Source of the DNA: Octopus sinensis
Lineage: Eukaryota
Length of the DNA stretch: 64,000 bases
NCBI RefSeq assembly: GCF_006345805.1
Contig: NC_043007.1
Location: 28,396,001 to 28,460,000, forward strand
Reading direction: 5' to 3'
Shown here: in pieces, positions 19,474 through 42,300 of the stretch
How positions within the stretch are numbered: position 1 is the stretch's first letter
Layout of the letters: the number at the start of each line of letters is the position of its first letter
Notes under the pieces: model-generated
Seen by the model: the letters and a program-made list of their open reading frames with translations, nothing else
Told to the model about the DNA's origin: nothing
Databases searched by the model: none
Program-made: the position numbers and the translations under genes

Positions 19474-19479
19474 TTTATT
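19474..19479 (-). terminator. Candidate poly(A) signal (AATAAA) for SelL
   Basis: First minus-strand AATAAA I found downstream of the SECIS, about 500 nt after the stop codon. Confidence 0.4.
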
Positions 19480-19898
19480 AAAACAAGCAAATTAAAAAAA
19501 TAAAAATTTGAAGGACTAAATGTAGCAGTTGTAGTTAGCAGCCCTTTATGCAGTGGCAGACTGAGAGTAATAAGGGTCCTCAGGCATAACTGTTCACCAA
19601 GCCCCTTAGCATTGATATCAAAGAGAGTTAACAAGTAGAATGTGGAGCCCTTAGCATTGATATCAAAGAGAGTTAACATGTAGAGTGTGGGCCCTCAGGC
19701 AGTGCCCAATTGACCAACAGCTCAGTCCACCCCTGCTTCTATGTGCATTCAGGAATTCATTTAGAAATAAAAGACATCTGTATTATCAAAATCGATAGTG
19801 TTACCATTGATGATGGTCATGATGTTAACATCCGGTAAAAATAATTACAAATATAGTTGTTAATGTATATAATAAACAAATTAACAATGATCAACTTC

Positions 19899-19977
19899 AA
19901 GACATGCGTTGAGATTTCCAGCCCAAGGTTTCAATGTTAGTGCTTTCATCTGGGGCCTTCATAGATACCACATGCTT
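19899..19977 (-). promoter_or_regulatory. SECIS element candidate (Sec insertion sequence) in the SelL 3'UTR
   Basis: mRNA reads AAGCAUGUG-GUAUCU-AUGAA-GGCCCCAGAUG-AAA-GCACUAACAUUGAAA-CCUUGGGCU-GGAA-AUCUCAA-CGCAUGUCUU. Helix I is 9 bp with one bulge; core AUGA(19962-19959)/GA(19918-19917); 11 nt from AUGAN to the apical AAA; GGCCC/GGGCU helix II. Folded by eye only. Confidence 0.75.
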
Positions 19978-19981
19978 CGTT

Positions 19982-19996
19982 TTACACAGGAAAATT
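19982..19996 (-). CDS. SELENOL: SelL terminal coding exon 10 (NFPV*), followed by the SECIS-bearing 3'UTR
   Basis: Acceptor gatatttcag at 19998-19997, then AAT TTT CCT GTG TAA, directly followed by the SECIS candidate. Confidence 0.72.
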   Translation of the reverse strand, partial: NFPV

Positions 19997-22900
19997 CTGA
20001 AATATCATAAAATATTTAGACTTAATAAGTAATTAATGGCTACCAAAGCAGGATTAATACCAAAAAGAAATCTAGATTTCCAACTTAAAATGGATTTTGT
20101 GTTAAAAGATGGAATACTGTGTTAACTTTGAGATGACCTTTCATATGGACTCGTGGTATATTGAAGCACTTGTTACAGCCCCCAGAACTGCAAGATCCTG
20201 TGATTTCCCCCTAATACGGGTTCCTCAGTGACGTGCCTGAATAGACACCGAAATTGTTGACAAGAAATTTGGCTGATATTGGTGCTGCTGGACATTTGTC
20301 ACTGAGGAACCAAAAGCAGGATGAAATGAGGTGATTGGGCAGTTCCAGCAGTCATAGCAGACGATTCTTGTCGGTCAGCAATATCATTACGAGTACTTTT
20401 ATACACCATGAGTCCTGATGGGAGATACTCTCAAGGTAAATAAAGCAGAATTCTGTATTCCAATGCAGCTTCCATGTCAAGTTGGTGATCAAGATTATCT
20501 ATTTAGACTTAATGTTTCATTTTATCAATGTAGTTCCTAAATGTTGCAATATCAAAGAGCTGATTGGTAAAAGAGGGATGATTTTGGTGAAATATTGATG
20601 TTTCACTCCGATTGAGTGACAGGCTGTTTCTGTTTCACTTAGATCAATGTAAGAGCTTAAAGACACATCGATGGAAAGTGCAATAATTTAGACATTATTT
20701 CACAAAACACACTAGTGTCTCTTGTGAATGTATTATGAGACTCTCAAGGTGGGCATTTGTGCATAAACAGAATCACAAATGTATTCAGTATTAATCTACA
20801 TTTCTACACATTGACTCCATTAAAAAGAGGAAGAAAACAACCAAAGCTTGCAAGTTGAATTGAAATGAGAAAAGACCTCATTCATGTGTACGTGCACACA
20901 CACAAACACACAAACACACACAAGTTGTCTCACTTCATATTTGTTATTTTTATATCTACAGTGTTTTCTATGTGCCTGTACGTACGAGTGTTTTGGCATT
21001 TTCAATAAAGAGTATCTTCTTTGGAACTGTTGAAACTCAAGAGAAAGAGATGAAGAGAGAAAAGGTTGAAGGGGGGGGGCTTACTACACTTTCAGTAAAT
21101 GAAATCTTACAGATTTTCAAAGAAGGCAAATATTCAACATCTCTGCATTTAATTTAGAAAGATTCTCCTCTCCATTAACAGCCCTTTGAAGGAAACAGTT
21201 GTAATAATATTGAAGAATGCTTACAAACATCTCATATAGAATCTTTCTGCTAAAGCAGCAAATGAGGAAACTATTATCTTCTGTCTACCACAAAACAGTA
21301 GCCACTTGGGTCTACATTCAGGACATGATCAATGGAGAAATCATACTCAATCATACCATTTATATGAATTATGTAGATGACAGCTTCTTTGTGACAGATA
21401 CACAAAAAACAAGTTGATACAGTCACTGGAAGCTTAAGAGATATCTCTTATACACTTTAAAATCTTACTTATTCAGTCAATGTAACACTAAAATACTAAT
21501 CTACATACATGAAGATGATCATTATCAACACAACGGTTAAATCCCAATTATATAATACACACACACACAATTTATGCTTGAAAGAAATTAATTAATAGGC
21601 AAAAACAGACATTAGTTAATAATCAAATACTTTCAATCACTGAATAATTTAACTCTAACTAGAAAATTAAACAACAAAGAGACCTTAATACTTCTTTTAA
21701 ACACATTTAGTGTATTAGATGAACTAAATCAATCCTAACTATAAAAATAGCTCACCAAACAGAATTCCATTGTAAATTATCATTAATAATGATATATAAA
21801 GTATGAACTTTTAAAAATCAGCAAGGCACTGCAAGTCAATAAACTGCCAAAGAATGATGGATACAATTTACTAATATTTATAAAGCTCATGACATTGTTT
21901 CTTTAGACTTAAAAGATACAAGACACTCTCAGTGACTGAGCTGTAAATGTTAGCTACAACTGTACCACTATAACACAAGAAACCAAAATTGCAGAGAAAG
22001 GGAACAATATTCGGGTAGAGAGAGAGAGTGTGTGTGTGTGAAAGATAGAACTTAAATTTGCTTCAAAAAGGCTGTTGTTGAGTCTATCAATGTGATCATT
22101 ATAGTAGGTTTCTGTTGAAAGATCTATTTTGTCTTGACGAGGTTGTTATTCAGCAGCATAGCAATAGGTAACGACTAGTATTCTGTGAATTCTTATTAAT
22201 AACAACAAACAGAAGATGATTAGTATAAAGAAACACCAGAAATTTATTGTTCCAGACAAAACATGGATTATTTAAAAGGAAAGTAAAAACTGGAGAATAG
22301 CCATCATCATCATCATCATCATCATTTAATGTCCGCTTTCCATGCTAGCATGGGTTGGACGGTTCAACTGGGGTCTGGGGAGCCCGAAAGCTGCACCAGT
22401 CCAGTCAGATCTGGCAGTGTTTCTACAGCTGGATGCCCTTCCTAACGCCAACCACTCCGAGAGTGTAGTGGGTGATTTTATGTGCCACCGACACAGGTGC
22501 CAGACGAGGCTGACAAACGGCCACGCTCGGATGGCGTTTTTTATGTGCCACCGACACAGGTGCCAGACGAGGCTGGCAGACGGCCACGCTCGGATGGTGT
22601 TTTTTATGTGCCACCGACACAGGTGCCAGACGAGGCTGGCAGACGGCCACGCTCGCCTCCCCAACAAACACATAAAAGATGTGTGTATGTACATACACAC
22701 ATCTGCTAAATTATGTGTGGGTGGATGTGTTTGAGTATCGAAACAGGAGAAAAATCACTCAAATATAGATTATTCTGTCAGACTCATCTTTTTTGTTGTT
22801 TCTGAAGGATTCCATATGGGGAGAAACTAAACGGTACCAGAATAGATCATCAGATTCAAATCAATGGACATCTCTTAATTAGTAATAGCTAGAAGAAAAA

Positions 22901-25900
22901 GTGATTGTAGAAGACAAACTGAAATGAGAGAATATAATTGGGATAATAGTGTAGAAGAGGAAATAGTAAAGAAGGAGTGATGATGATGATGGAGCAGTAA
23001 TGACAGGGTGTAACAAGAGAGAGAGAGAGAGAGAGAGATTAATATCAGCAGCCGACAGTTTGTTGGTGAGAGCATAAGTGATGGTGGTTTTAAAAATGGG
23101 CAGTGGTAATGAATTCCTCCATTGGGAAGAGGGAATGGTAACTTGCAGTATTAAAGGGTAATGTCTGCTTTTCCATTTTTTGCTTTAGCTAAATGAAATT
23201 TGTTTAGGTGAATATTCAACAGCCAGGTGCCCTTCCTGACACCAACCCTCACTTGTTTCCAAGCACTGAGTATTTCCTCATGTCCAGACAAGTTATTTGA
23301 AAAGTGAAAATTATATCATTTGTATAATGGTGAGATGCTCATTTAGGACCATCATGTGACATCAAGACAAGGATACATACACATAATAGATTTCTTTCAG
23401 TTTCCATCTACCATACCCATTCACAAAGGCTTTGGTCAGCCCAGATCTATAACAAAAGACACTTGCCCAAGGTGACAATCTTGAGTTTAAAATGCAAGCA
23501 GTATTGTGTGTCTGGGTAGGTTGTTTCATTCTACACTCCTCAGTTCCCTTGACTCTTGAGAGCAATCTCACCCATCACTGCACCCATGTGTGATTAATGA
23601 ATAAGAAAAGATTTTGGTATTATGTTATTGGTTGATAAAAAAACAACTGTTGGTCGATTCCATCAAGTACTACTTTTCCATAGCAAAGGTAATAAACTTC
23701 TCCACTGTTTTAATACAGAAAAAATAGTTTCAATATTGAGTATTTCCTTCTCTAAATATTGTCACCATGGCAACAATATCAAATTTTTAATAATCTCAAA
23801 AATTTATAATGATTCAAAGGTTGTCAACAGCAATGAGGTTTACTGACCTTTAAGGTTCCTAAAATTTGCTCAGCAGAAGGTCGATCACTTGGAGTCTGAC
23901 TGCGATAGGTAAACAAGATTTTACCAGTTTGGTCAATGATGAAATCACCACCCATCTAGCAAGAAATAATAAAGTATTTTGGTTTAGGATCAGATTGTAT
24001 CAGGTTTTAATTTTCAGTCAATGCTCAGTGACTCTTAATATCACAAGTTGGGTGTCTGTACAAGTGTACAGTAATCTCTTGACTACCACCGGTGTTACAT
24101 TTGAAAACCTCCCACAGAAATAATTCAAATCTAAAAAAATATAAATACCTATCGACTGCAGAAATCCAGATATACTGAGGAGTTTGCAGTATAAATTTAC
24201 AAATATTAGCCAGAAAAATCCACGATGTACTGAGTGCATGACAAGTGAACCATGATATACTGAGTGCGCAAGAGGTGGACAGTGATATGACGAGGGACTA
24301 CTGTATATAGATTTGTGTGGTTTCTGCGATCCTTCTTCTCATGTAATTTGCATTATTTTGCTCAGATTTTAACATCCAGTCGTAGTCTTAAGTTTACAAT
24401 GGAAATATAAGAACTAAAAGCTATGATTTCCATCCTAAGTTATAATTTCAGAATAAGTTATCATATTTCATCTCACTCATCATCATCATCATCATCGTTT
24501 AACATCAGCTTTCATGCTGGCATGGGTTGGACGGTTTGACTGAGGGCTGGCAAGCCAGAAAGCTGCACTTAGGTTCCAATCCGATCTGGCAATGTTTCTA
24601 CAGCTGGATGCCCTTTCCAACGCCAACCACACTGAGAGTGTAGTGGATGCTTTTTACGTGCCACTGGCATGAGGGCCAGTCAGGTGATACTGGCATTGGC
24701 CACGCTCAAATGGAGCATTTTACATGCCACCAGCACAGGACCAGTCAGCTAGCACTGGCATCAACCACGCTTTAGAGGTGATCATTTAAATAAAATTGAG
24801 TGGTTAGATATTAAAATGTCCTTACTTGGTAAATATCTTCATTGAAATCTTTATATGGAGTTGGGATAATCCCATCAGAAGCCATTTCAGCAGCATAATA
24901 TTGTGTGGTCTTCATACAAAACACCTGTAAATAAATATATTAATATCATCAATTACTTGAGATTACAAATTGTACATTTATGGGAGGAAAATATACCTAG
25001 GTGGGGTTTCATCATAGTCCTCCAGGCAATAACAGAGGAATTCAAGACAGGATGCCCCTGGGAGCTCCTCTATGCTGATGACCTTGCTCTAATTGCTGAA
25101 TCACTATCAGAACTAGAGGGAAAGTTTCAGGTGTGGATGCAAGGATTAGAATCGAAGGCCCTTAGAGTCAACCTAGCTAAATCCAAAGTCTAATAAGTAG
25201 GAAGGCAGACAAACCACAAACCCCTTTCGGTAGATGGTCCTTTATAAAAGACTGGTGACAAAGGGCCTCTCTCTCAGAGTAAAAGGTAGACTGTACAATG
25301 CATATGTGCGAACTGCCATGCTACATGGAAGTGAAACATGGGCTGTGACTGCTGAGGACATGTGTAAGCTTGCAAGAAACGAAATCAGTATGTTCCACTG
25401 AATGTGTAATGTCAGCGTGAATACACGACAGAGTGTAAGTGCCCTGAGAGAAAAGATGGACTTAAGAAGCATCAGATGTGGTGTGCAAGTGAGATGACTA
25501 TGCTGGTATGGTCATATGTTGCGAATTAATGAGGACAGCTGTGTGTAAAAGTGTCACACCCTAGCAGTTGAGGGAGCCTGTGGAAGAGGTAGACCCAGGA
25601 AAACCTGGGATGAGGTGGTGAAGCATGACCTTCGAACATTGGGCCTTACCAAGGCAATAGAGATATGCTGTGCTTGAGAAGACCCAACAAGCCAAGTGAT
25701 ACCATAGCCCATGGTCTATGCCAGTGGGTGTAACCAGCCCATTTATGAATACCCCTCATTCATTGGATAATAAACCTTGCTTGCAAAGACCTGTTGAAGC
25801 AAGTGAAATCAAAATCAAAATTGCTGATGTGGCCGACGACAGTAGCGCTTGATTGGCACTCGTGCCAGTGGAATGTTAAAAGCACATCAGAGTGTGACCA

Positions 25901-26470
25901 TTGCCAGGGCCACAGATTGGCTCCTGTGCTGGTGGCACATGAAAAACTACATTCGAGCATGGTAATTGCCAGTGCCGCCGGACTGGCTCCCATGCAGGTA
26001 GTATGTAAAAACACCTTTTGAGCGTGAGTATGGTCATTGCCAGAACCGCCTGACTGGCCCTCATGCCAGTGTCAAGTAAAAAGCACCCACTACACTCTCA
26101 GAGTGGTTGGCGTTAGGAAGGGCATCCAGCTGTAGAAACATTGCCAGACCAGATTGAACCTGGTGCAGCCTCTGTCTCACCAGTCCCCAGTCAAACCCAT
26201 GCCAGCATGGAAAGTGGACGTTAAACGATGATGATCTCTAACAAAATTATGAAGCCTTAGATTTGATGGTAGGTTACAGGAGAATAGTATGGGATTATGT
26301 GATGTTCATGCTTCTCTTCCAATATATTAGTCTTCTCATTGATCTCAGACACAACTCTCTAAAGCCATTCCTAAAAACTACGTAAAAATGGAAATAAAAC
26401 AAGGAGTAGAATTTATCAAAGTAAGGTCTGACCCCAGCTAATGAAATATTTTCATTTATACATCAGTATT

Positions 26471-26506
<36 letters not shown>

Positions 26507-26782
26507 AAAGAGTATAATATAAATATCTTACTTCCTTGACAGATCTACGTAATCCAAGAGCAGAGTAAATCTAGAAAAAAACAAAACAAAATTTGTGATT
26601 AAGTGACAGAAAGTTACTAGCAAGATTACCCCCACCTCACGTATATATATATACATACATACACACATGCAGATCTATACACACACACATCTATATAGAC
26701 ATACACACATACACACATATACATACTCTCACATACATAAACATATATACACATATAAACACACACATATACATACACCCAC

Positions 26783-26815
<33 letters not shown>

Positions 26816-26831
26816 TAATACATACACCCAC

Positions 26832-26862
<31 letters not shown>

Positions 26863-29800
26863 CACACACATATGCATACAACTCCCCCCCCACACACACA
26901 CGTATATATGATGGCTGCCCAGTCGTGACCAAGGAAGACCATTGCTAACCTTCAGGAACATTGTGCAGTCGAGGACTAGCTTATATTTTGCATTTACGGA
27001 TCCATTGGTGGCTAATAAGCCCTGCTCTTGACAAGGATACACAGGTGCAAACACTGCAGACCAAGCTTTCCCCATTCACTAAGGAGAGCTGTGTGAAGAA
27101 GTGCCACACCCAAACAGTGGAAGGAACCCGTGGCAGAGGGAGACCCAGGAAGACATGTAATGAGGCGGTGAAGCATGACCTTCAAATGTTGGGTATCACA
27201 GAGGCAATGATGAAAGACCGAGACCTCTAGAGATATGCTGTGACTGAGAAGACCTGACAAATTAAGTGAGACCACAGCTGTAGCCTATGCCAGTGTCGCA
27301 TAACCAGTCACTTAACAAAAGTACCTTTCGATTGTAGGGCGACATGCTGTGCTTGGGGAGACCTATTGAATGAAGAACATCAACATCAAATCAAATGGAA
27401 ATTATAGTTGTGGCTGATGCCAGCGACACCTCTCTGTGCCAGTGACACGTAAAAAGCACCATCCAAACGTGGCGGGTGCCAGCCCTCTCTGGCCCCTGTG
27501 CCAGTGGCACATAAAAAGCACCCATTACACACAGAGTGGTTGGCGTTAGGAAGGGCATCCTGCTGTAGAAACACTGCCAGATCAGATTGGAGCCTGGTGC
27601 ATTCCCTTGGTTTCTTAGACCCCAGTTGAACTGTCCAACCCATGCCAGCATGGAGAACAGATGGTAAATGATGATGACGATGATTACACTTTAAATTCTC
27701 AATATTAAGGAATCTGCTTTATATATTCTACACATCTCAAATCATGTCTTGGAAATTTATACTAAACTGCTTTCTTATATTTTCTCATTTTTCGTATATT
27801 TTGATTCATTTCATGCTATATTTATGTATTGAATTATGCTTATTATATATTCTCTCGTTTTATTATTATTTTATTCTGTTTCAGTTCACCTTTTACTTGC
27901 TATTCTACTTTATCCTTTACATTACCTTATTTTACTTTATTCCATTATACTATTTTTAACTAATTTTTAATTATTTTTTTAATTCCTATAATATTATTTG
28001 CATAGTGACTATCTACCACTCACATTCTTTATTATTTTCCTAATTTTTTAATTAGAATCCTTATTTTATTATTATCCATTTGCTTTCATAACCCCTTTTA
28101 ATGTAAACTCCTTTATTTATCTAATGATGGCCACTCTTCTTATTTCATGCCCTCCCCCCATCGTATTATCAGATTTATCATCTCCTTAATGATCCTTCCA
28201 GCCTTAAAGGGGGTATATAGAGGGCTGTTAAGTGTATAAATAACTGGGTAACCTTAGCCTTTGTACTTAGTGCTAAAACTGCTTGTTGAATAGAATTAAA
28301 AGATAAAAGAAACTAATTTGATCATAGTTGTAGGGGGGAGATGCCTCACTATCTGATTGCCCCCTACTCCATCCACTAACCTCCTCTATTACTATAAATC
28401 TTCATTACCCACTACCCATGCATGACATTGCATTATTTTCTCCTATAATACTACCAAACTAAACAAATTAATTCTATGACCAGCAAGGGTTGTAGAATCA
28501 TGAAGGTGCACATCTCCAACCCACTGCCCTCTAAACAACAACTGTCTCAGAAAAGAAATTGTATACAAGGCCAAGGTCATGGATCCCAATGGAGTAGCAA
28601 AGACAGACAGAATGATGGGCAACTCATTCAAGAAGAGGTACACACAATAGCTGGCATCATTCAGAGACAAATAAAAGACACATAACATCCCTCTCCAATA
28701 ATGATATGGACATTGAAACAAGGTGGAATAAGTAAACCCCAGATAAAATGGAACATCATTGCTAAAGTCGGAAAATACAGAAGATGCAGTACCAAATGTG
28801 AACTCTGTATCACTGAAAAATTAAATATCATACAGTCAACAATTAACATTCTAAATATTAGGGGTGAAATCTCCTTGCATACATGAGCAATATTTTACTA
28901 TCAAACATTTCAAAGAAGAAACACTACCTGTGCTGCTAATCCCATCAGGATATCTCCTTTCCTGAATGTGAAATTTAAATATACATAATACATGAACTTC
29001 ACACACAGAAGGAACATGCCCCTATGAAGGACTACCTTGCTACACAAGCATATGAACATCACATACAACTAGAATATACTATATGATAATGCAAACAAAT
29101 TTACCATCCAACACAATTGTTGGCCCAAAAGTCAAACCTAAGAGAGACAACCACTTAAAAGATGTCATCCAAGAGTAGCATCTCATGATTTATTTATGAG
29201 AATCTCTGTGAATCTTCCCTCATGTGAAGCGGAATGTGGATTTACCTCTATGTAACAGAACTGGTAATGTAATTACATGGTTTTGTTCAATTCAAAATAA
29301 AAGAAAAATCCTGTTTTATACAATTCGACAATGATAATTATTAACAGTTAATATCTCTGAATCTTTTACATACGGCATTGGCATTTGAAAATAGATTTAA
29401 GAACATTTCACTTTTGGAAAAAGGGATAATCCAAACTGCCAGAAAAACATTAATTTCGTATAATGAAAAATATTGGACCCGTAGTGATATCCCAGATAAT
29501 TTCGATGTTACGATGGGATCTTCTCATTCCACCTAAATCACTGACATTGTTGGGCTATTCTTATTATCAATTATTAAGGAGAAATTTCCAAATATTAGCA
29601 GGGGATTATATAGAGATGACGCTTTATTTGTCATTTTGAACTTTCCCTTACGAAAAATTGATAGGAGTAGGAAACAATTAATTAGGGTCTTTAAGGGATA
29701 TAATTTAAATATCACTTCTGAAAACAGGTGTCTAAGATTGCAAATGTTTTAGACATTATCCTGAACTCGGAAAATGGCCTATTCTATCCTTATTTAAAGG

Positions 29801-31622
29801 ATAAGACTATCCAGTATATCAACATATTATCTAACCATCTAAAAAGTGTCATTAACAGAGTAATTAAAGGGGTATCAATTAGGATATCTAATCTATCTGC
29901 CAATGACTAGGTTTTTAATAATCACATACACACATGTATCTGGCCCTTATGAATAGTGGCTTTAACACGAAACATACATAAAAAAAATACTGTATTTAGA
30001 ATTAAGCTGGCTAGAATGATCCCAAAATTGGGTGATCTAAATATAGATATCCCATCTAATATTGACCTTCTTGAACTTGAACGATGTAGATATAATACAA
30101 AAAAATAAGAATTTAAATTATAATAATGTGGGTAATATTAATGTAACTAGGGAATTCTATAAAAAACAGCATGGAAATGGGATATTATTTGGTTCACCCC
30201 CCCTCCCCTCCTTACAGGTTAAAAACCTTCCCCAGTTATTCTTTAAATTAATAAATTGAGAATAATTTTCCTTCAACACATAGGAACCACTCTATTTTTA
30301 ACAAATCAACTCTGAAATTTTCTTATTCCACAACATTGAGCCTCGGATCGATTATTGCCACAAATAATAAGCCTAAAATATGAAATGTGACAAATACTAA
30401 CAGTAACAAAGGAAATAATAATAAAGAAATGGGTGGCTTTGCAAAAAACAGTTGTGATTATAGCTCTCAAAATAATTGTCCATTAGAGGGTCAGTGTCTA
30501 CACAACAATGTAGTGTATAAATGAATACTTTAAATGAGGTTAAAAAAGTATACACTGGAAGCACTACAAATTTCAAGATTAGATATAGGGCACAAGTGAA
30601 TAGGAAAAATTCAACTGCTTTGGTCATATAAAAAACAGTAATAGAATATACTCTCTAAAATGGTTTATCATGGGGGAGTATACTGCATATAACACCCAAA
30701 TAAAAACCTGTAGACTTTGTTTGAAAGAAGTCATAAATATATTAAGAACAGTTATTGCTGAATAAGATATCTGAGGTCTTGATCTCATGTCAGCACAATT
30801 TGCTATGAACTTTCAAATTTTTTAGAAAATAAAAAGATTTTTAAAATTTTAGAAAAAACAAAAAGTTTTTAAAATGCTGTGTTCTCCGATATAGATCTCC
30901 ACTCATCCTTATTCAGGCATATAATTTAGTATAGGTATAAATATAATTTTGTTATTTCTAGTAATTATAAGACATGAAAATTTATTTTATACATACCGGA
31001 CCACTTTTCATTTTTATTTTTTCCTTTAAACTCATTTACAACTCTTTCAGCTCTTCTATATTTATTACCAAGATCACACAGTTGTTGTGGGAAAAACTCT
31101 TTTAAAAAAACTTAAATTTAAAAAAAAACCTAAACTTTAAAAATTCTATCTCTGATGAAGGAAATGCAGCCACCAAAGTCAAAAGGAAAAGTTTTTGCTT
31201 TGTGTATTCCCTGAAATGATCGTAAGATATCTTACTTCATTATATTTTTATTTCAGCCATGAACTGCTTTATTTTTATTTCATTCGAGGACAGTTTAAAT
31301 TCGCCTTACTCTATTTAATTTTATTTCATTGAAAGGCTATTGTAAATCTTTTAAACATCTCACCTGCTTGTGATTTTAATTTATTTTATCGGATGTAATT
31401 TTCTGTATATATCTTGTGATCACCCAACCTTGGAATTATATAATAAAAATATATATGTATATATTTGATTGTATTCCCAATTTGAATATGTATTGGCCGG
31501 ATAAGGAGGATGATAAATTAATCTGTTTTCTCTCCCGCCATGAACTTTGATATTTGCTCAATATATTGAGCCCTTCCATGTTATTCCATGGAAAGAGTTA
31601 CACTCTTATTATTCAATTTTAT

Positions 31623-31659
<37 letters not shown>

Positions 31660-34600
31660 CATTGTAGCTCACTTGAAGCATTGTAGTAGAGAAGTAGAAA
31701 ATGAAAGAAAAGAGAAATAAGGAAAGCTTCTAATGATGCAGAGTTTTCAAAAGGTAAAAAAAGGCCTATCTTAAAAAGGAAGCAATCAAAGATCTGTGCA
31801 TTTGCATAGATTTTGTTATTTTCAACTGTTCAGCATTTGGGTTAGCAGCAGCAACTCTCCAACTGTTGGTAATATTTAGAATTCAACATTTCTGAAAAAT
31901 ATTTTAAAATGTCTCACATTTTTTGAAGAATCTTGAAAAGAAGGAAAAGAAGATTTTGTTTCTGCCAACCACTGCTTTATAGACTTCTGTGATCCAAAGA
32001 AAAGAAGTAGAACATCGCAGCCTAAAGCTTTCAAATCTGACTGCAAAATGAAATAAAACTGTGTCAGTCATTTTATCAATTTAAGTATTTAGGGAAATAA
32101 GGTGGAGAAAAGAACCAACATTTTTTAGGGTTAATAGTAAATTTAAATATCTTTTCAAATATTTCTTATATTAATGGCAGCTTAGCAGTTCTGAATAGAT
32201 ATCTTTAACTTCTTAGAAATATTGTTTATAATCTGGAAGGGTATATTCTGAGCAATGCAAGTGAAAAGTTAGGCAAAATATGTAAAATGACATCAATAAA
32301 TAAAAACCATAGAAAATATATTGTATAACTTTACATAGGTTGTTTAATACTTTTATAATATTTTGGGAAGCATTCCTCTTATCAAATAAGGGAAAGAAAA
32401 TAATCCATGAATTTAGAGCGAAGTGTTGTTACTGGCAGAGGCCATTTTGGTATGTTGGATCACAAGAAGGTTAACAGACAAAGAAGACCGTTTAAACCAG
32501 CCATATGGGCCGGCCCAAATATTCTAGATGGTTTATATTCAAACTGGCGATATCTAGCCTCTAACCTAAATTGACATTCTAAAAATAAACAATCACATCA
32601 TTGAAACTTCAAAGCTATAAGATAATGCATGATTAATTCAAAACCATTTGAGTGAAAAAGTATTACATTTAACAGAGTAATGTGAACACTAAACGGTTAA
32701 TATGCAACAGATGCAGAGGAGCAAAAACTAAAAACATAAAAGAGAGAAATTTTCTGAAATGCACAGATGGTTCTCTGGAGGCAGGCAATAGTTTCTATTA
32801 CCTATGTGATCTTATTAGCAATGGAGGAAAATTTTCTGCAAGTATAGATTCTAGAACAGAACCAGCTGGAGAAAGTGCTGTTGTGACTACTAGTTACTGC
32901 CACATTTGATGGTTACCACTGCCATTAGCCTGTCTGTAACCTATATATACATAAATACAGGATCACATGTAGGTTAACATGTAAAAACGCATGTTACATA
33001 ACATTTCTGCAGAAGAAAGTGAGACAACAAAAATGATGACTAGAGTTATCGTAGACTGGGGGGGGGGGAGAAGAAACAAGCTTACCTTCCAAGTTTCTAG
33101 CTCCATTACATGTTTACGTCAGGGTAGTCATGCAAAATGGCGCTGGAGAACAAGTAGTAAATAAGGAGAAGTGAAAACTGGGAGTAATTTGTCCAGAGTT
33201 ACTGAATTTCCCTCTAGTACATCAACAACTGTTAGTTGCTGGGATAAATAATCTCCAACCTCAAGTGTTTTAGTTTTCCCATGGGACTCACCATGGAGAG
33301 CAGTATCTACAGTGTGAAGAAACTGATCCCATTCTATCTGTAAAAGAATACAAACCAAAAGAGAATATTAAAGAAGATTGGCTAGGCACGAATTAGCCAA
33401 TTACAGAAGAAATGTAGGTGTGGCTCTTGAGGAGATGTGTAAATGTTTTAGGTTTGAATTGAGGCTTCCACCTCTTGTGTAACTTGCTAGTCTTGAAGTA
33501 ATTTCATGAGGTAAAGAAAATGTTTGATTAGCAGATGACTGCATACATATCCAAATATATACATAAATTGTAGGTTTTGTTAAAGAGGGTCTAATATATA
33601 TCCTCTTATACAAAATCAACTGTATAATTAGCTAGCTGTAAAAGAACAATTATTACAGCAGTAATGGAAATTGACAAATTTTGTCAAAGCAATATCAGCC
33701 ATGAAGATGATAGGTCTATATACACACACACACACACATATATAGAGAGAGTTTTTCTTCTCCTAGATGGGTTGCCATCACCATGGGTAAGGAGTCTCAT
33801 CTGCCCCATACATATATATACACACACGAAAAAAAGTAAAAATATGAGATTTAAGAATATATATATAAGATATGTAAAAGCAATATATACATATGTACAC
33901 CCATTTTTGTTGGATGACCATTGATTAGTCCTCCACCCTTTGACAGGTTTTGTTTTTTCGTCCACAGGGTGTCCAATAAACACCCTCTTCACAAAGCAAG
34001 TTAAGTGGGGTTGCCAATTTAGTCGCTGATGACTCGACTATGCAATAGGATGTGCTAGGTTACATGTTACCAGTAGCGCCTGAGTGTGACCTGACATATG
34101 CAACTTCTCTTTCGCTAATTCCCAACAGTAAGGTCAATTGGAAGGGGCCACTCTTGCACTTCAAAGACAAAGTAAAAGACAATCTGAAGCAAATCAATAT
34201 TCCCTTTTCTTTCTGGGAAAGCAAAGCATCAGAACACAGGACCCGGTACCAGTCCTGCTTCTACTCAGTTCAAAGATCTGGGCAAAATCGACTCCAACAT
34301 TGGGACCAACTTTGTACAAACATGAAGACACGCTAGCAAAATGCTGCTCCTCTCAATGGAAACCTTACCTATCATTGTGGTTTTGTGGCACAGCAGAATC
34401 ACTACCAGAACTAGAAAAGAAATTTCAGGTGTGAAAGCAAAGTTTAGAATCAAAAGGGCTTAGAGTCAATATTGCAAAAACCAAAGTCCTAGTAAGTAGG
34501 AAGGTGAACACACCACAAACTCCATCAGGTAGATGGCTCTGCTCAATCTCTAGAAAAGATGTACTCCATAAGATGTACCCAGTGTAAGCTATGTATGCAT

Positions 34601-37600
34601 AAGAGGTGCAGCAACATCAAAGGAAGGTCAACCAGGATGATAGCTTTTGTGTGCGTCAGATGCACAGGGACAATAAACACTGCAGATGCTCAGAAAACAG
34701 ACTCCATCACATGCCAGGGAGAGAAAGTAGTAGTAGTTGACAGCTTCTGCTACCTAGGTGACCAAGTCTGTAGTGTGGGGTGGAAGGCTCGGAGAGTGTT
34801 GCTTCTAGAATAAGAAAAGCCTGAACAAAGTTCAGAAAGCTCCTATCTCTACTGGTGACAAAGGGCCTCTCACTCAGAGTGAAAGGTAGATTGTATGATG
34901 CATGTGTGCAAACTGCCATGCTTTACAGCAGTGAAACATGGGCTGGGACTGCTGAAGACATGTGTAAGCTTGAAAGAAATGAAGCTAGCATGATCCGCTG
35001 GATGTGTAATGTCAGTGTGCATATACGACAGAGTGTAAGCACCCTGAGAGAAATGTTGGATATAAGAAGCATCAGATGTAGTATGCAAGAGAGACGACTG
35101 CACTGGTCATGTGCTGCGTATGGATGAGGAGAGCTGTGTGAAGAAGTGTCACTCCCTAACAATGGAAGGAACCCGTGGAAGAGGTAGACCCAGGAAGACA
35201 TGGGATGAGATGGTGAAGCACAACCTTCAAATGTTGGGTATCACAGAGGCAATGATGAAAGACCAAGACCTCTGGAGATATGCTGTGATTGAGAAGACCC
35301 AGCAAGTAATGTGAGATCAAAGCCATAGCCTATACCAGTGGTGCAAACCAGCCCTTTTAAAAAGTACCTTTTAATCGTCGGGCAACATGCCATGCTTGAG
35401 GAGATCTATTGAGCCAAGTAAAATCAAAATCAAAGCTCAATCAAAAATGGAAATTGTAGTTGTGGCTGATGCCAGTGCTGCCTGACTGGCTCTTGTGCTG
35501 GTGGCATGCGATGAGCACCATTCATGTGTGGGTCATTGGCAGTGTCGCCTGACTGGATCAGATTCGAGCCTGGTGCAGCCTCCTGGCTTGCCAGTTCCCA
35601 GTCAAAGCGTCCAACCCATGCCAGCATGGAAAACGGATGCTAAACGATGATGATGAAGCAGAGCAAGCCTTGCTGTTCACTCAAGAAAAGACACAGTAAA
35701 TAATCCACAAGCACTGAAGCAAACTGAGTCCTCAACACTTGTCCCATTTGCCGAAAGGCTTGCAAGGCACCAGCAGACCTCAAGAGACACATTCGTGCCC
35801 ATAGAACATTTTATTTTATTAACACAATATTTTACTGAACCCACATCTATCGTTCATGACAAGAGAATCCGTCATATATATACATACTTTAGTTGTGGAT
35901 TAACAAGGCTACTAATGGTAGCCACAGGAATATTGGTATTTGTCTCCATTTTGGATGAGAATACAAGATTTTGAGGAAGATAATATACATATTATAGTGC
36001 ACCTGAGCACTGTACACAATTATTATTATTATTATATCACGGGACGTAACTTGTAAGGAAATCTTAGTTGTTGCCTCCCCTGCATTAGCCCTGGGATATT
36101 CACAAGGAACTGCATGTTTTGTATGGATGTGCATGTACACATATACGTAATGTTTTTTTATAAATTTGGATGTGCACAAGCGTTCTCACATAAAATGATT
36201 CAAGAAGGGAGACAGGAATTAAGATTTCTTTATAAGTTACTTTCCATGATCTGTATATTTATTCATCCTGAAATTCCACACAGTCTCGTTTTTCCAAAAT
36301 GGGGATGAGCACTAGCGTTTCCATGTGACAGGCTCGAAAATTGATAAGAGATTTCTTTTTACGTGAAATCATTGGTAGCCTTCTTAACCCACAGATAAAG
36401 ATTTATTGACTAGTGTTGAACACTCATTATCACTGTTTGATATTAGCGTGTATGTATGTGTGTGTGCATAGATATAACAACATGAAGTATGCATACAAAT
36501 GAGTTAAATACGCAAACAACGAGACAAAAAAAAAACATGGAAAATAGGACAAGTAACACAAAGAACGACCCTTCATCAGTTGTTGACTGTCTATCTGCTC
36601 CTCATTCAACGGCAATATGAATCTTCGAAGACAGTTGCTTCCATAAATTCCAAAATAAAATTTTGGATTTATGGAGGCTCAAAGTTGGGAACAAAAACAG
36701 GACAGTGAAGACATACAAGGAAACTTAATGAAAACAAACATGGAGGGTCATTAGACCAGAACGAGAGGAAAATAGTAAATGCTGGATGAAATATTTTCTT
36801 TGAAAAGGGAAAAGATAGATGTCCAGTCCTTAGAAAGTCGTGCAGGAAAAGAAAGATGGATGATAGTCACGTGTGAGCAACGAGAGAGAGAAACTTACTT
36901 AGAAATGGATGCGTGGTATTCAATGAAATAATAATATAAATTCATCATCATCATCATCATCGTTTAACGTCCGCTTTCCATGCTAGCATGGGTTGGACGG
37001 TTCAACTGGGGTCTGGGAAGCCCGAAGGCTGCACCAGGCCAGTCAGATGTGGCAGTGTTTCTACAGCTGGATGCCCTTCCTAACGCCAACCACTCCGAGA
37101 GTGTAGTGGGTGATTTTATGTGCCACCGACACAGGTGCCAGACGAGGCTGGCAGACGGCCACGCTCGGATGGTGTTTTTTATGTGCCACCAACACAGGTG
37201 CCAGACGAGGCTGGCAGACGGCCACGCTCGGATGGTGTTTTTTATGTGCCACCGACACAGGTGCCAGACGAGGCTGGCAGACGGCCACGCTCGGATGGTG
37301 TTTTTTATGTGCCACCGACACAGGTGCCAGACGAGGCTGGCAGACGGCCACGCTCGGATGGTGTTTTCTTATGTGTCACCGACACAGGTGCTAGACGAGG
37401 CTGGCGGACGGCCACGCTCGGATGGTGTTTGTTACGTGCCCTCAGCACGGAAGCCAGTCATTGCGGTACTGGCTACGGTCACGTTCGGATGGTTTTCTTA
37501 TGTGCCACCGGCACTGGCACCACAAGGATACAAATTCCATTGATGTTCATCTATTTTGATTTGGTTCGATTTGATTTGATACGATTCGATTCGATTCTCA

Positions 37601-39329
37601 CTTGCCTCAACAGGTCTTCACAAGTGTCACAAGAAGGAAGGTATGCACAGGTGGACTGACTACGTCCCAGGTAGGGGCCACGGATTATGGCTTCACTAGT
37701 CTTGCGGGTCTTCTCACGCACAGCATACTTCCATAGGTCTCGGTCTCTAGTCATTTCCATGGTGAGACCTAACGTCCGAAGGTCGTGCTTCACCACCTCG
37801 TCCCAGGTTTTCCTGGGTCTACCTCTTCCACGGGTTCCCTCAACTGCTACGGATTGGCACTTTCTCACACACCTCTCTTCATCCATTCTCGCCACATATA
37901 TATTAGTAAAATTAAAAAAATGTTAAAGAAATGCTACAAAAATGTCATGCATTACCTCAAATTCAATGAGATTATTTGCCAGCTCTTTTACAGAAGAATT
38001 TCTAAAACAAACAAAAATATTGACATTTCAAATGAAGAAATTTGATTCATCATTTTTGATTACTTTCACCAACTTTAAGGCAGGGTGTAGTGCGGTGGGG
38101 TGGAGTATTGGTATGGTGCAGCGGGGGTGAAGTGTAGTTGACAGGGAACATTGACAATTGTGTTAGCTGAGGAAAGGGGCACTAATGATTTCTGGCCCAT
38201 AACTCTGAGCTCAGAATTTAAGATTTTGGCCATGGTACATGGTGCTTGTTAGTAATGTGGTTAGGAGCATGTAGATGTGCAGGATTCCTGGCAGATCTAT
38301 TCACAACCATCTCTTTCCTCAAGCAATACATCCCAAAGTAGATGACTATTAACCCTTTTGTTAACAACCCGACTGAAACCACCACTTGCTCTGAAGTACA
38401 AATGTCTCATTTTCATAAATCTTCCACCAAACTTTAGTCACAATTTATGTTTCTAACACTAGCTTAATGATAACTAAGTTATTTGACTAAATTCTCAGTT
38501 ATATTTAAAATTAATTGAAAGAAACACAGAGCATCTCAAAATAAATACGATAATGAAAGGGTTAAATATGGTTTTTATGAAGCTCTGATCCATTCGGATC
38601 AATCCAAAGCTTTAGACAAATTTGCCTATCAGTATTCAGTGCAACTAGTTTTGATTTTGTTTGTAGGTTGGGTCCCTTCAATGTCAAGAAGCTTTTTTGT
38701 TCTGTAACCAGACTAAATGGCCACTGGTCAAAACCATTTCAAATCTCATGCTTAATCCATGTCCTTTCACATTGCTCCTACATATTTTATCTCACGAGCC
38801 AGTGTTGCAGAAGAGGTGTTGAGGGGCATCCCATTTCATCTAGGATACAAGAAGGCTGTGTCAATGTATGCAGACAACATCACCACAGAAATCATGCTGG
38901 TCAGCACCACACTGAAGGAATAGGAAGGAGTAACACGAGGAAGCATTAATTAGTGGGTTTGCAATTCAGTAGCTTTCATCCCTCCTGCATCAAGCACTGG
39001 AACTGGAGGTGTTAACTAATCCCTCCCCTCAAAACAGCTGACCTTATGCCAAAGAAATCACTGTTAGAGTGGTGTGTGAGAGAATTCTTTATTTAGTTGT
39101 ATCTCTTTACATTCTGAGTTCAAATCCTGCTGTAGTCAACTCTATATTTCATCCTTTCAGAGTAAATAAAATACCCAACAGCTATGATTGAATTAACTAA
39201 AAACCCTTCACAAAAGTTGTGGCTTTGTACCAAAGTCAGATATTAATTTCAAGGACTTGTAAAATCAATAACACTAGACAAAGTATTTAAGTCCCTTCAT
39301 GTTTTGTTGATTTGGGTAAATAGCGAAGA

Positions 39330-39360
<31 letters not shown>

Positions 39361-42300
39361 ATAATAATAATAATGTTCTTGAATTGTCTCTAACTAACAC
39401 CATGCCAGTATGGAAAATGGACGTTAAATGATGATAACCCCTACACATTTCGGGTTAATGTAAGAATTCATCATCATTATTATTATTATAGCGTGCTCTT
39501 AGTGGGATCCACTCTGTTGTAAATATTTAAACTAGGGCCCCAGCTTAACTTCTTACTAGTGTTAAAATCTCTAGACCTAAATGGAAAATGAGATTGAAAA
39601 GCTGAGCTGGGCTGGAACTAATCCTATTCCTCTTTGGTGTTTGATTGGTGAAAAGGTGTTAGTATAGTTTTGTTAGCCAGAGACTATCATCTTGGACAAG
39701 GACACCCTCTGAATCGCATCCAATATTTACTGAGATTATTCCTCTGCTATCCAGCCAATCTACTACGAGGGGAATTCCAGAGTTTTGAGACTTTTTTTAA
39801 GAGAGGCAGTTATAACTGTCCTAGATTATTGTAATTTTGGTCTCTCATCACTACTTCATATATCTAATAAGCTGACCTGCCAACTCTTTTTTTAATTTTT
39901 ATTCCAGATTGAAGAAGTTGGAGAGTTTGATAAGATCTTGTTTGATAACAACACTTTGAACACACTCCACCAAACATTGCTTGTTACAGGTGACTAGTTT
40001 GCAGAATGCAATCAGGATGTAAATAAATCTGGAAGCTTGCTATGCAAACTGGGGACGGATGAACACGCACACACACATACACTACAGAAACTTATGAAAC
40101 TCTTCAGACTGCTTATGGATTAACTTGTCTGAGACGAGCATCTGTTTTATGCCAGAACAAGAGGTTCAAGGACAATAGAGAGGAGGTGAGTGACAATAAG
40201 AGGTGCAAGAAAGAAAGGAACATCAGAACTAGTTGAGAAAATTCACAATTTTTTGCATGAAGGCCCAAGTATTTTTATCATCATTAGAGTGTACTGGGTG
40301 CTTCTTTACAAGGTGCCAGCACAGGCACTATTTTATGTGGTGCCAGCACAGGTGATTTTTTACAAGATACCAGTATGGGAACTTTTTTATGAAGTGCTTA
40401 TGCGGCACCAGTACAGGTGCATTTTACATGGCAGCAGCACCCATGAAGTTGTGACTTGGCTACCCCAGTAGGACAAGGAAGTGTTGAGGCAGAAGCATAA
40501 GCTCCTCCACCTACACCCACCTCAATGTGGCAACTATACACAGAATTATTTATGAAGGTCTGAGCATGTGCAAAGTTTGTTCTCAGGGTGCTCAATGATG
40601 AACAGAAGGAAAGATGCATTGGTAACAGCAGGGAGATCGTTGAGCTCATTACTGCCAATCCAAGTGTACTTTTGAGTCTCTCATGACTTGTGAAAAAAGC
40701 TGGATCTGTTATGATCCAGAGACAAGGAGACAGTACCTAATGGAAGTATCCTGACCCTGCCAGACACAAGAAGGTCAAGCAAAGCATGTCCACTAGGAAG
40801 CTCGTGGTAGCCCATTTTTTCAACAGCAAGGGCATCATTTATATACACTGGGTCCACTCTGGTCAGATAGTCAACAAAGAGCACTTTGTGGAGGTTCTGA
40901 GAGAGTTGAGGAAAAAATTTCATCACAAAAGGGTCAGAGCTCTTCCACTTGGGTCAGTGGCCCCTGCACCAGGACAATACATCAGTCCATGATTCCATTC
41001 TGATTACTAACTACTTGATAAATATTGGTATCAGAACTGTCCTTCACCTTCCCTGCAGTCCAAACGTTGTTCCCTGTGACTTTTGATTGTTTCACAAGCT
41101 GAAGGAAAACCTCAGGGCTAGTTGTTTTGAAGATATTGAGATGAAGAAAGCTGTGACAAGGGTCCTGGGCACGTTCACTTTGGAGGATCTCCACCAGGCT
41201 TTCCTAAAATGACTCCTCGAATGCTACAATAAGAGCATTGAAGTCAGACAATCCTACTTTGAAGGAGATTAGAATTTTGTACTTCTTCTGGAATGAACCC
41301 CATATACTTTATCAATTCCTGAAGAATGAAAGGCCAAGGCAGTATTTGAACTGATGAAGTCATCATTTCTAACAGCTTTACCACTAGATAAAACAACCCA
41401 CAATATAATTTAGTTAAAATTATTTACCTGAAATGCTTTCCTAGCTGTAAATCCAGTTCCTTTCGATTTTGAGAGCCAATGCTGTTGTAAATTCAGTAAA
41501 ACAGGAAGATGTAAATAAAAAATGTTTTGTTAGATAAAAAAAGAATTTCAAACATTAAATATTATCACCACCATCATTACTATTATATACATCTACATTT
41601 TGTCCTCCTATTATAATAGAGCAGGAATATTTTTTGTTACAAACTCAAACTTCTATATATCATTAGAGAAATAGTTTTAAAATAAGTTCCCTTCTTATAG
41701 CAAACTAGTCATACATGATGTAGGAATTGTACCTGGGAAAAATAAGGAGACAAACAGTTTTATGGGTTCATCCTTAGAACAACCAAAAGTCTTTTGCTAC
41801 TGTTTTTTGTGACTTCAGTTAAATAATAGACAGATGCATTGAGTTATATTGAAATTGAAAAATTAAGTTTAATTTTCAGATGTCATTTTTGCAACAACAA
41901 TGTCACACTGCATCACCTTAACTGTTTACACTGCAATGTGAGTTTCAAATTTTGGCACAAGGTTAGCAATTTTGAGGGAGGAAGGAAGTCAATGACATCA
42001 CCCCCCCCCCCAGGGCCCAACTGATAATTATTTCACTGACTCCAAGAGGGTGAAAGGCAAAGCTGACACTGGCAGAATTTGAACTCAAAATATAAAGACA
42101 AACAAAATACTTGGCATCATTTTGTCTGGCATGCTAACAATTCTTCCAAATCACCTCTTGTTTATAAGACATATTAGGGAAGTTAACACTATAGATGATT
42201 TGGGAGGGGGTGATTTCTTCACACTAACATTGGTTGGATTTTTTAACTAAGTCTTTCAAAGTCACTTTTTTTCTCTACATTTAACAGGTTCTCACCCACA

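What the first reader, a model, noticed from the sequence alone, without database searches (positions are those of the whole stretch)
19899..19996. SECIS-like stem-loop starts ~4 nt after the stop codon in a 5-codon terminal exon 3.8 kb downstream
Seen: acceptor tttcag, then NFPV-TAA, then AUGAA-(11 nt)-AAA-...-GGAA closed by a 9-bp lower helix (AAGCAUGUG/CGCAUGUCUU). Established: eukaryotic Sec decoding needs a 3'UTR SECIS with a non-Watson-Crick GA/AG quartet and apical adenosines. Inference: this single SECIS serves both UGAs, about 415 nt upstream in the mRNA. Because it sits in its own exon, splicing of intron 9 would decide whether the mRNA can make the selenoprotein.
Basis: partly seen in the sequence, partly recalled or inferred. 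Interest (0 to 1): 0.75.

Follow-up and report, generated by a model that had tools for sequence, protein, structure and literature searches.

The report
Octopus SelenoL gene's SECIS element
The stem-loop is very probably the real selenocysteine-insertion signal (SECIS) of an octopus selenoprotein L gene that public annotation splits in two; it sits unusually close to the stop codon but is otherwise an ordinary member of a well-known RNA class.

Summary
On the minus strand, a GT-AG intron of 3851 nt ends at tttcag. The last exon then reads NFPV-TAA (19996-19982). A 79-nt stem-loop follows at 19977-19899 with AUGAA, AAA 12 nt later, and GGAA.

The gene is a 10-exon SelenoL orthologue (320 aa, AhpC-TSA_2 fold). 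Its two in-frame TGAs form the family's U-L-P-U motif.

In this window alone the stem-loop is unremarkable. It scores 14.1 bits against Rfam SECIS_1 (gathering 35). Its folding z-score is -0.77. About one pattern match of this quality is expected by chance in 128 kb.

The comparative evidence is what decides it:
- Argonauta hians has the same micro-exon (SFPI-TAA) and the same 19-nt spacing from stop to AUGA.
- Its element scores 30.5 bits (E 2e-4) against SECIS_1.
- Conservation is confined to the stem-loop, the exon and the intron end; the flanks are unalignable.
- The 134 codons after the UGAs have dN/dS 0.29, so they are translated.

No rival SECIS was found.

SelenoL genes of other organisms also have their SECIS within about 50 nt of the stop. 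I judge this a new member of a known kind, of modest interest.

The parts
19899..19977 (-). SECIS stem-loop. Helix I: 19977-19967 with 19910-19899. 5' core AUGAA: 19962-19958. Helix II 5' strand: 19957-19948. Apical AAA: 19946-19944. Helix II 3' strand: 19929-19920. 3' core GGAA: 19919-19916.
   Evidence: Sequence. MFE fold. SECIS_1 RF00031 full-length match 19971-19906 at 14.1 bits. The Argonauta orthologue scores 30.5 bits, E 2e-4. Pair counts: 84.8% of cells paired against 32-48% in slid controls. Alignment z-score 9.4 against flanks at 0.4, 1.3 and -1.6.
19982..19996 (-). Coding part of terminal exon 10: AAT TTT CCT GTG TAA (NFPV-stop).
   Evidence: Splice model reproduces P0002. Argonauta has AGT TTT CCC ATT TAA. 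O. bimaculoides protein P0122 also ends NFPV.
19997..23847 (-). Intron 9, 3851 nt, GTCAGT...TATTTCAG. Its last 30 nt are conserved with Argonauta, where the intron is only 816 nt.
   Evidence: z 4.7 for the last 30 nt; -1.6 for the 80 nt before them.
23848..23955 (-). Exon 9 (MGGDFIIDQTGKILFTYRSQTPSDRPSAEQILGTLK).
33086..33337 (-). Exon 5, carrying the two in-frame TGA codons (33130-33128 and 33121-33119) of the motif RHFA-U-L-P-U-RKHV.
   Evidence: The same TGA-CTN-CCN-TGA is found in O. vulgaris, Argonauta, a pufferfish and a sea anemone.
19982..44162 (-). Whole SelenoL coding region: 10 exons, 963 nt, 320 aa including 2 Sec. Exons: 44162-44015, 42579-42501, 41481-41428, 38001-37956, 33337-33086, 32040-31918, 26570-26532, 24924-24826, 23955-23848, 19996-19982.
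   Evidence: Exact splice solutions with GT-AG introns. PF13911 AhpC-TSA_2 on the C-terminal half.
19474..19479 (-). First AATAAA hexamer downstream, 503 nt after the stop. It is a possible poly(A) signal; the real 3' end is unknown.
   Evidence: pattern match only.

Best explanation
The stem-loop at 19977-19899 (minus strand) is the single SECIS element of an octopus orthologue of selenoprotein L (SelenoL).

The gene has ten coding exons. Exon 5 carries two in-frame UGA codons, three codons apart, which encode the Sec-Leu-Pro-Sec redox motif. After intron 9 is removed, the mRNA ends with NFPV-UAA, and the SECIS starts 2-5 nt after the stop.

By analogy with all eukaryotic SECIS elements, the expected mechanism is as follows:
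- AUGA and GGAA form the sheared G.A/A.G kink-turn.
- SBP2 binds that kink-turn.
- SBP2 recruits eEFSec with Sec-tRNA[Ser]Sec.
- Ribosomes reaching the two UGAs, 448 and 439 nt upstream, insert selenocysteine instead of terminating.

Shown here: the motifs and helices, the exon structure, the two UGAs, the conservation of both gene and element in Argonauta, and purifying selection on the codons after the UGAs.

Inferred: kink-turn formation, SBP2 binding, actual Sec insertion, and actual use of the 23848->19996 junction.
For: 1. The gene is SelenoL.
- It has an AhpC-TSA_2 domain.
- RHFA-U-LP-U is encoded by TGA CTA CCC TGA.
- The same U-L-P-U is present in Argonauta, a pufferfish and a sea anemone.
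- A profile search recovers 191 relatives, most of them fragments that start just after the UGA pair.

2. The codons after the UGAs are translated. Over 134 codons between window and Argonauta, dN/dS is 0.29 with dS 0.88, and exon sizes are identical. A working SECIS must therefore exist.

3. Window-versus-Argonauta blastn gives colinear blocks only for exons 2-9 and for 20025-19902, which covers the intron end, the micro-exon and the stem-loop. Alignment z-scores are 9.4 for the stem-loop against 0.4, 1.3 and -1.6 for the flanks.

4. Argonauta keeps AUGAAGGC, AAA at 12 nt, GGGCUGGAAA and the 19-nt stop-to-AUGA spacing. Its element matches Rfam SECIS_1 end to end at 30.5 bits, E 2e-4. SECIS_1 is also the only family matching the Octopus element.

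5. The core fits the published consensus UGAN/KGAW (PMC3753652): UGAA and GGAA.

6. Five substitutions in the stems are one-sided and keep pairing.

7. No other SECIS_1 match at E<=10 lies in 14000-24000. My strict pattern scan of the whole window finds nothing else on the minus strand between 50283 and 12672.

8. SelenoL genes of other organisms carry Rfam-supported SECIS elements equally close to the stop.

9. The element is single-copy, not a repeat.
Against: - The Octopus copy scores only 14.1 bits, against an Rfam gathering score of 35, and appears only when 93 nt are searched.
- Helix II has two mismatches in ten positions, and the small apical helix seen in Argonauta and other SelenoL SECIS (CUG...CAG) is degraded.
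- Folding energy is not unusual: z -0.77 in Octopus, -1.15 in Argonauta.
- No pair shows a change on both sides. With only two diverged lineages, covariation cannot be demonstrated.
- No transcript, junction read or proteomic evidence could be obtained. The exon junction rests on three annotations, consensus splice sites and conservation.
Confidence: 0.85

Rival explanations
1. The stem-loop is a chance match to the loose SECIS pattern. The real SECIS lies elsewhere in a longer 3'UTR or in another terminal exon.
For: The pattern is not rare: 0.95 matches of this quality are expected per 128 kb. The Octopus score is 14.1 bits. An energy-based descriptor ranks a site at 16022 slightly better, -20.1 against -18.7 kcal/mol.
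Against: The element is conserved in Argonauta at the same position, where it scores 30.5 bits. The 16022 site lies 4 kb downstream, past three poly(A) hexamers. It is not conserved and lacks a proper helix II and apical loop. No SECIS_1 match at E<=10 lies anywhere in 14000-24000.
Confidence: 0.04
2. The conserved block serves another purpose, such as terminal-exon definition, splicing enhancement or 3'-end processing. Its resemblance to a SECIS would then be incidental.
For: Conservation starts 30 nt inside the intron (z 4.7). That part is more likely a branch-point and polypyrimidine signal than a SECIS.
Against: The strongest conservation (z 9.4) covers exactly the stem-loop and stops at the end of helix I. 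The invariant letters are the SECIS-defining ones: AUGA, AAA and GGAA. Stem substitutions keep pairing. The gene needs a SECIS, and nothing else is conserved downstream.
Confidence: 0.04
3. The element is the ancestral SECIS but has decayed in the genus Octopus. Sec insertion would then be inefficient, and the gene would mostly yield a 178-aa truncated product or be on its way to loss.
For: It scores 16 bits lower than the Argonauta element. It has two helix II mismatches and has lost the apical mini-helix.
Against: Both TGAs and all ten exons are intact in the window. The post-UGA protein is identical in O. vulgaris and about 95% identical in O. bimaculoides. dN/dS is 0.29. Rfam scores are poor predictors of SECIS activity.
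Confidence: 0.07

Closest known systems
Eukaryotic SECIS element (Rfam RF00031 SECIS_1; SECISearch3 description, PMC3753652)
   Same: It lies in the 3'UTR after a UGA-containing ORF. It has helix I, an internal loop, the core UGAN/KGAW (here UGAA/GGAA), a helix II of 10 positions and unpaired AAA 12 nt after the core. The UGA-SECIS distance of 439-448 nt is well above the 51-111 nt minimum quoted in PMC3753652.
   Different: It is below the Rfam gathering score in both octopods. The Octopus helix II has two mismatches. The apical part looks like a form 2 mini-helix in Argonauta but is barely formed in Octopus. Helix I starts only 2-5 nt after the stop codon.
Selenoprotein L (SelL/SELENOL). Shchedrina et al. 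2007 PNAS 104:13919 (recalled, not held); described in PMC13134290, PMC2397514 and PMC3473315.
   Same: It has two Sec in a UxxU motif at the CxxC position of a thioredoxin/peroxiredoxin-like fold. The RHF[AG]-U-LP-U motif is identical to that of fish and cnidarian genes. There is one SECIS candidate for both UGAs.
   Different: It has not been reported from cephalopods in the papers I could search. SelL was not found in the one mollusc examined in PMC3473315, Lottia. Public octopus annotation splits the gene in two at the UGAs.
SECIS elements inside coding regions (fowlpox GPx4 homologue; Mix et al., PMC1802603)
   Same: That work shows a SECIS that ribosomes have to pass through can still work. 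A SECIS whose base is reached by the terminating ribosome is therefore within known tolerance.
   Different: Here the element lies entirely after the stop codon. Only the lower part of helix I would be entered by a ribosome that stops at UAA (inference).
Selenoprotein mRNA variants that differ in SECIS content (human SELENOP and SELENOS; PMC5133445)
   Different: In those cases the variants were observed experimentally. Here no alternative isoform has been seen, and retention of intron 9 would not remove the SECIS.

Membership tests
Eukaryotic SECIS element | Lies downstream of, and on the same strand as, an ORF with in-frame UGA, in the 3'UTR | tested here: met
   Exact splice model. The stop is at 19984-19982 and the element at 19977-19899. 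The UGAs are 448 and 439 nt upstream.
Eukaryotic SECIS element | Core letters UGAN on the 5' side and KGAW on the 3' side, facing each other | tested here: met
   AUGAA (19962-19958) and GGAA (19919-19916) lie opposite each other in the MFE internal loop. They are invariant in Argonauta. Consensus taken from PMC3753652.
Eukaryotic SECIS element | Unpaired conserved adenines in the apical loop or bulge, about 10-13 nt after the core | tested here: met
   AAA lies 12 nt after AUGA in Octopus and Argonauta, unpaired in both folds.
Eukaryotic SECIS element | Helix II of suitable length with few mismatches and little bending | tested here: inconclusive
   Octopus has 8 of 10 positions paired, with mismatches C.U and A.C. 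Argonauta has 9 of 10.
Eukaryotic SECIS element | Helix I below the internal loop | tested here: met
   Octopus has 11 standard pairs with one mismatch and one bulge. Argonauta has 4 + 7 pairs.
Eukaryotic SECIS element | Covariance-model score at or above the Rfam gathering score (35 bits for RF00031) | tested here: not met
   Octopus scores 14.1 bits and Argonauta 30.5 bits, E 2e-4. Other SelenoL SECIS also fall below it, at 26.4 and 19.9 bits. The threshold therefore misses this family's elements generally.
Eukaryotic SECIS element | Compensatory base changes supporting the helices | tested here: inconclusive
   There are 5 one-sided pair-keeping changes and 0 double changes. 84.8% of cells are paired against 32-48% when slid. 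Only two diverged lineages were available.
Eukaryotic SECIS element | Binds SBP2 and directs Sec insertion at UGA | not testable with these tools
   Needs a binding assay and a reporter or 75Se-labelling assay.
Selenoprotein L (SELENOL) | Thioredoxin/peroxiredoxin-like fold | tested here: met
   Precomputed Pfam PF13911 AhpC-TSA_2 on P0002 and relatives.
Selenoprotein L (SELENOL) | Two Sec codons forming UxxU at the redox motif | tested here: met
   TGA CTA CCC TGA lies in frame in exon 5. The same motif is present in Argonauta, a pufferfish and a sea anemone.
Selenoprotein L (SELENOL) | Sequence homology to fish SelL | tested here: met
   The profile search hits Takifugu and Pampus proteins at E 5e-23 and 1e-20. 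The Takifugu locus encodes LLLVLIRHFG-U-LP-U-RDHV.
Selenoprotein L (SELENOL) | Diselenide bond between the two Sec | not testable with these tools
   Needs protein chemistry.

The most novel reading that the evidence does not exclude
Placing the SECIS directly against the stop codon may be a selected feature of SelenoL genes. The core lies +20 nt after the stop in octopods and +27 to about +50 in five SelenoL genes from other organisms. A terminating ribosome would have to melt the base of helix I each time it finishes. That could couple termination or recycling to remodelling or reloading of the SECIS-SBP2 complex. Alternatively, it could help keep the complex near the ribosome for decoding two UGAs three codons apart.
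Probability: 0.1. Interest if true: 0.55.

Novelty: new member of a known kind. Interest (0 to 1): 0.3.

Why it matters
- It adds SelenoL, the selenoprotein known for a diselenide bond, to the cephalopod selenoproteome.
- It shows that public octopus annotations split the gene into two 'hypothetical proteins' at the UGA pair.
- It gives a usable gene model of 10 exons and 320 aa, together with its SECIS.
- It illustrates that Rfam's SECIS_1 gathering threshold misses every SelenoL SECIS examined here.
- It points to a possible family-wide habit of placing the SECIS within about 50 nt of the stop codon. That could be checked on a larger set of genes.
- None of this changes the understanding of how Sec decoding works.

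Tried and rejected
**Rfam searches**
- At gathering over the whole window there was nothing.
- At E<=10 over 501 nt and over 10 kb there was no SECIS. The Octopus match appeared only in a 93-nt search.

**Folding energy**
- Tested as evidence, it was not significant.

**Octopod-only covariance model R1**
- It found only the training loci. It was too narrow to recover non-octopod SelenoL SECIS, so it gives no independent support.
- It does show that the element is single-copy.

**An independent model from non-octopod SelenoL SECIS**
- The MAFFT alignment A5 misaligned the 3' GA core, so I built no model.

**Transcript evidence**
- The O. bimaculoides protein P0122 has no contig on record.
- P0002 is recorded only on the genome contig.

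**Literature**
- Shchedrina 2007 (PMC1955791) and Baclaocos 2019 (PMC6885538) are not held.

**SECIS elements in other loci**
- For the two transcripts closest to octopus (L003, L006), and for the pufferfish (L009) and anemone (L010) loci, neither Rfam nor my descriptors gave a convincing element. Nothing can be said about their stop-to-SECIS distance.
- In L014 the only candidate is weak, at +93.

**Rejected alternatives**
- The lower-energy site at 16022 is not conserved, lies 4 kb downstream and has poor geometry.
- A coding exon on the opposite strand cannot explain the conservation, because no ORF longer than 33 aa lies there.

Full report
**1. What is in the sequence**

Read on the minus strand, the window shows the following, in order:
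- the acceptor ...atgatatttcag;
- AAT TTT CCT GTG TAA (19996-19982);
- 19 nt;
- AUGA (19962-19959);
- 12 nt;
- AAA (19946-19944);
- 24 nt;
- GGAA (19919-19916).

A lower helix pairs 19977-19967 with 19910-19899. The minimum-free-energy fold gives this same architecture. AUGA and GGAA face each other in an 11x11 internal loop, between a lower helix of about 10 pairs and an upper helix.

**2. The gene**

A scan for in-frame TGA-NNN-NNN-TGA flanked by open frame found ...LLLVLQRHFA-U-LP-U-RKHVMELETWK in an exon at 33337-33086.

A protein search returned two adjacent Octopus vulgaris 'hypothetical proteins':
- P0001, 178 aa, ends in RHFA.
- P0002, 134 aa, has Pfam AhpC-TSA_2 and starts at MELETWK.

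The public annotation has thus split one gene at the UGA pair (accessions).

The window is about 98.8% identical to that O. vulgaris chromosome, so it comes from the same species complex.

Exact splice solutions with only GT-AG introns give ten coding exons:
- 44162-44015
- 42579-42501
- 41481-41428
- 38001-37956
- 33337-33086
- 32040-31918
- 26570-26532
- 24924-24826
- 23955-23848
- 19996-19982

That is 320 codons including two Sec. Intron 9 is 3851 nt.

The motif RHF[AG]-U-LP-U is encoded by two TGAs in Argonauta hians, in a pufferfish and in a sea anemone. A profile search finds 191 relatives, most of them fragments of 110-135 aa that begin just after the UGA pair.

This is selenoprotein L. 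The literature describes it as a selenoprotein with two nearby Sec that can form a diselenide, found in fish and aquatic invertebrates and lost in tetrapods (PMC13134290; PMC2397514). SelL was not found in the one mollusc, Lottia, surveyed in PMC3473315. I found no paper on a cephalopod selenoproteome.

**3. Is the stem-loop more than chance?**

Within the window alone, no.
- The folding z-score is -0.77.
- Rfam finds nothing at gathering.
- Rfam finds no SECIS at E<=10 in 501 nt or in 10 kb.
- Only a 93-nt search shows a full-length SECIS_1 match, at 14.1 bits and E 2.4, against a gathering score of 35.
- My SECISearch-like pattern requires [AG]UGAN, a helix II of 10-13 nt with at most 3 mismatches, AA, NGAN, and a 7-bp helix I with no mismatch. 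It hits once in the window. Dinucleotide shuffles give 0.95 hits per 128 kb.

The evidence that counts is position and comparison.

**4. Comparative evidence**

Argonauta hians is the other octopod for which DNA was obtainable (L002).

*Gene structure*
- It has the same exon sizes after the UGA pair: 21, 123, 39, 99, 108 and 15 nt.
- It has the same kind of micro-exon, tttcag AGT TTT CCC ATT TAA (SFPI-stop).
- The exon is followed by the same 19 nt to AUGAAGGC, the same 12 nt to AAA, and GGGCUGGAAA.

*Covariance model*
- The Argonauta element matches Rfam SECIS_1 over the whole model at 30.5 bits, E 2e-4.

*Extent of conservation*
- Window-versus-Argonauta blastn yields colinear blocks for exons 2-9 and one more at 20025-19902. 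That block covers the last 29 nt of intron 9, the micro-exon and the stem-loop, and it ends at the last pair of helix I.
- Global-alignment z-scores against shuffles are:
  - 9.4 for the stem-loop;
  - 3.7 for the 15 coding nt;
  - 4.7 for the last 30 nt of the intron;
  - 0.4 and 1.3 for the next two 80-nt stretches of 3'UTR;
  - -1.6 for the intron further upstream.

*Selection on the coding sequence*
- For the 134 codons after the UGAs, dN/dS is 0.29 with dS 0.88.
- These codons are therefore translated, which requires a working SECIS.
- Neutral sites between the two genera are close to saturation, so the localized conservation is meaningful.

*Base pairing*
- On the three-sequence alignment, 84.8% of cells are paired, against 32-48% when the 3' partners are slid.
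- Five substitutions are one-sided and keep pairing: U-A/U-G, G-C/G-U, U-G/U-A, and C-G/U-G twice.
- No pair changes on both sides, so true covariation is not demonstrated.

*Third annotation*
- The O. bimaculoides protein (UniProt A0A0L8FTW6, P0122) also ends in ...GTLKNFPV.

**5. Rivals for the SECIS**

- No other SECIS_1 match at E<=10 lies in 14000-24000.
- My strict pattern finds nothing else on the minus strand between 50283 and 12672.
- A looser, energy-based descriptor ranks the candidate second of 23 sites in the 12 kb downstream of exon 9. The first, at 16022, lies 4 kb further on, past three poly(A) hexamers. It has poor geometry and is not conserved.
- No ORF longer than 33 aa on either strand explains the conservation.
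- An octopod-specific covariance model finds one copy in the window and one in L002, so the element is not a repeat.

**6. How the Octopus copy differs**

Compared with Argonauta, and with SelenoL SECIS from other organisms, the Octopus element has two mismatches in helix II (C.U and A.C). It has also almost lost the small apical helix CUG...CAG that the others share. This explains the 16-bit deficit.

It could mean a weaker SECIS. However, the gene is intact in three Octopus genomes or annotations, so I treat 'decaying SECIS' as a minor rival.

**7. Mechanism**

What follows is inferred from established knowledge of eukaryotic Sec decoding.
- The core fits UGAN/KGAW and should form the AG-GA kink-turn (PMC3753652).
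- SBP2 binds the kink-turn and brings eEFSec with Sec-tRNA.
- Both UGAs are recoded. They lie far beyond the 51-111 nt minimum spacing quoted in that paper.
- One SECIS for two Sec is what was reported for SelL (my recollection of Shchedrina et al. 2007; the paper is not held).

**8. The splicing idea**

It is true that the SECIS reaches the mature mRNA only as part of the last exon. That holds for most selenoprotein genes, though.

A transcript that retained intron 9 would still contain the SECIS and would merely end in VSKPHCC. Only polyadenylation within the intron would give a SECIS-less mRNA. ATTAAA hexamers exist 57 and 134 nt into the intron, but there is no evidence that they are used.

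Variants with different SECIS content are known for human SELENOP and SELENOS (PMC5133445), so the concept is not new either.

**9. The stop-proximal position**

Helix I begins 2-5 nt after UAA, and the spacing is identical in Argonauta. This is not unique to octopods. In SelenoL genes or transcripts from other, unidentified organisms, the SECIS core starts at these distances after the stop:
- +27 (L008b; 19.9 bits);
- +30 (L011; 26.4 bits, -31 kcal/mol);
- +38 (L008a);
- +44 (L013);
- about +50 (L012, with a UUGA core).

For several other loci (L003, L006, L009, L010) I could not locate the SECIS, and L014 has only a weak candidate at +93. The trend therefore rests on a partial sample.

A ribosome stopping at UAA would enter the lower part of helix I (inference). 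SECIS elements placed inside coding regions still work (PMC1802603), so this is tolerable. Whether it has a function is open.

**10. Verdict**

The SECIS interpretation is well supported by comparative evidence, though not by the window alone and not at Rfam's curated threshold. The splicing-switch inference is unsupported.

This is a new, unannotated member of two known kinds, a SELENOL gene and its SECIS. It has one mildly unusual trait, the SECIS abutting the stop codon, which may be shared across the family.

Noticed in passing
window 19982-44162 (-); L001: The public O. vulgaris annotation splits this SelenoL gene at the UGA pair into two 'hypothetical proteins': CAI9730809.1 (178 aa) and CAI9730810.1 (134 aa). 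The Argonauta and O. bimaculoides entries likewise hold only the post-UGA fragment.
   Followed up: yes
L008 2264-2331 (-) and about 5408-5481 (+); L011 1703-1771; L013 about 1460-1540; L012 about 995-1050: SelenoL genes of other, unidentified organisms also have their SECIS core within about 27-50 nt of the stop codon. All examined SelenoL SECIS fall below Rfam's SECIS_1 gathering score.
   Followed up: partly
L012, about 45-95 nt after the stop at 954: This SelenoL 3'UTR has a SECIS-like element whose 5' core reads UUGA instead of A/GUGA (CUUGAUGCC...UGGCUGAUG).
   Followed up: no
window 15438-15540 (both strands): A near-perfect hairpin of about 100 nt matches several unrelated miRNA families on both strands (best 38.9 bits, far below gathering). 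It is probably an inverted repeat of a mobile element.
   Followed up: no
window 27683-27410, 26235-25956, 24771-24488, 22628-22315, 18119-17862: Copies of an interspersed repeat of about 290 nt (70-85% alike) lie in the introns and downstream of the gene. The O. vulgaris locus carries many copies too.
   Followed up: no
window 10276 (+): The sequence fits the loose SECIS pattern (AUGAA, 2 helix II mismatches). No associated UGA-containing ORF was looked for. It is probably chance, given about 7 such loci expected per window.
   Followed up: no
window 19997-20026 (-): The last 30 nt of intron 9 are conserved with Argonauta (23 of 29 aligned positions identical, z 4.7) although the intron differs five-fold in length. 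This is presumably the branch point and polypyrimidine tract of the acceptor for the tiny coding exon.
   Followed up: partly
window about 12600-14800 (-): Short blocks are conserved with Argonauta downstream of SelenoL. They correspond to the next annotated gene, which carries a Tex55 domain in O. vulgaris (L001 28889-31327).
   Followed up: no
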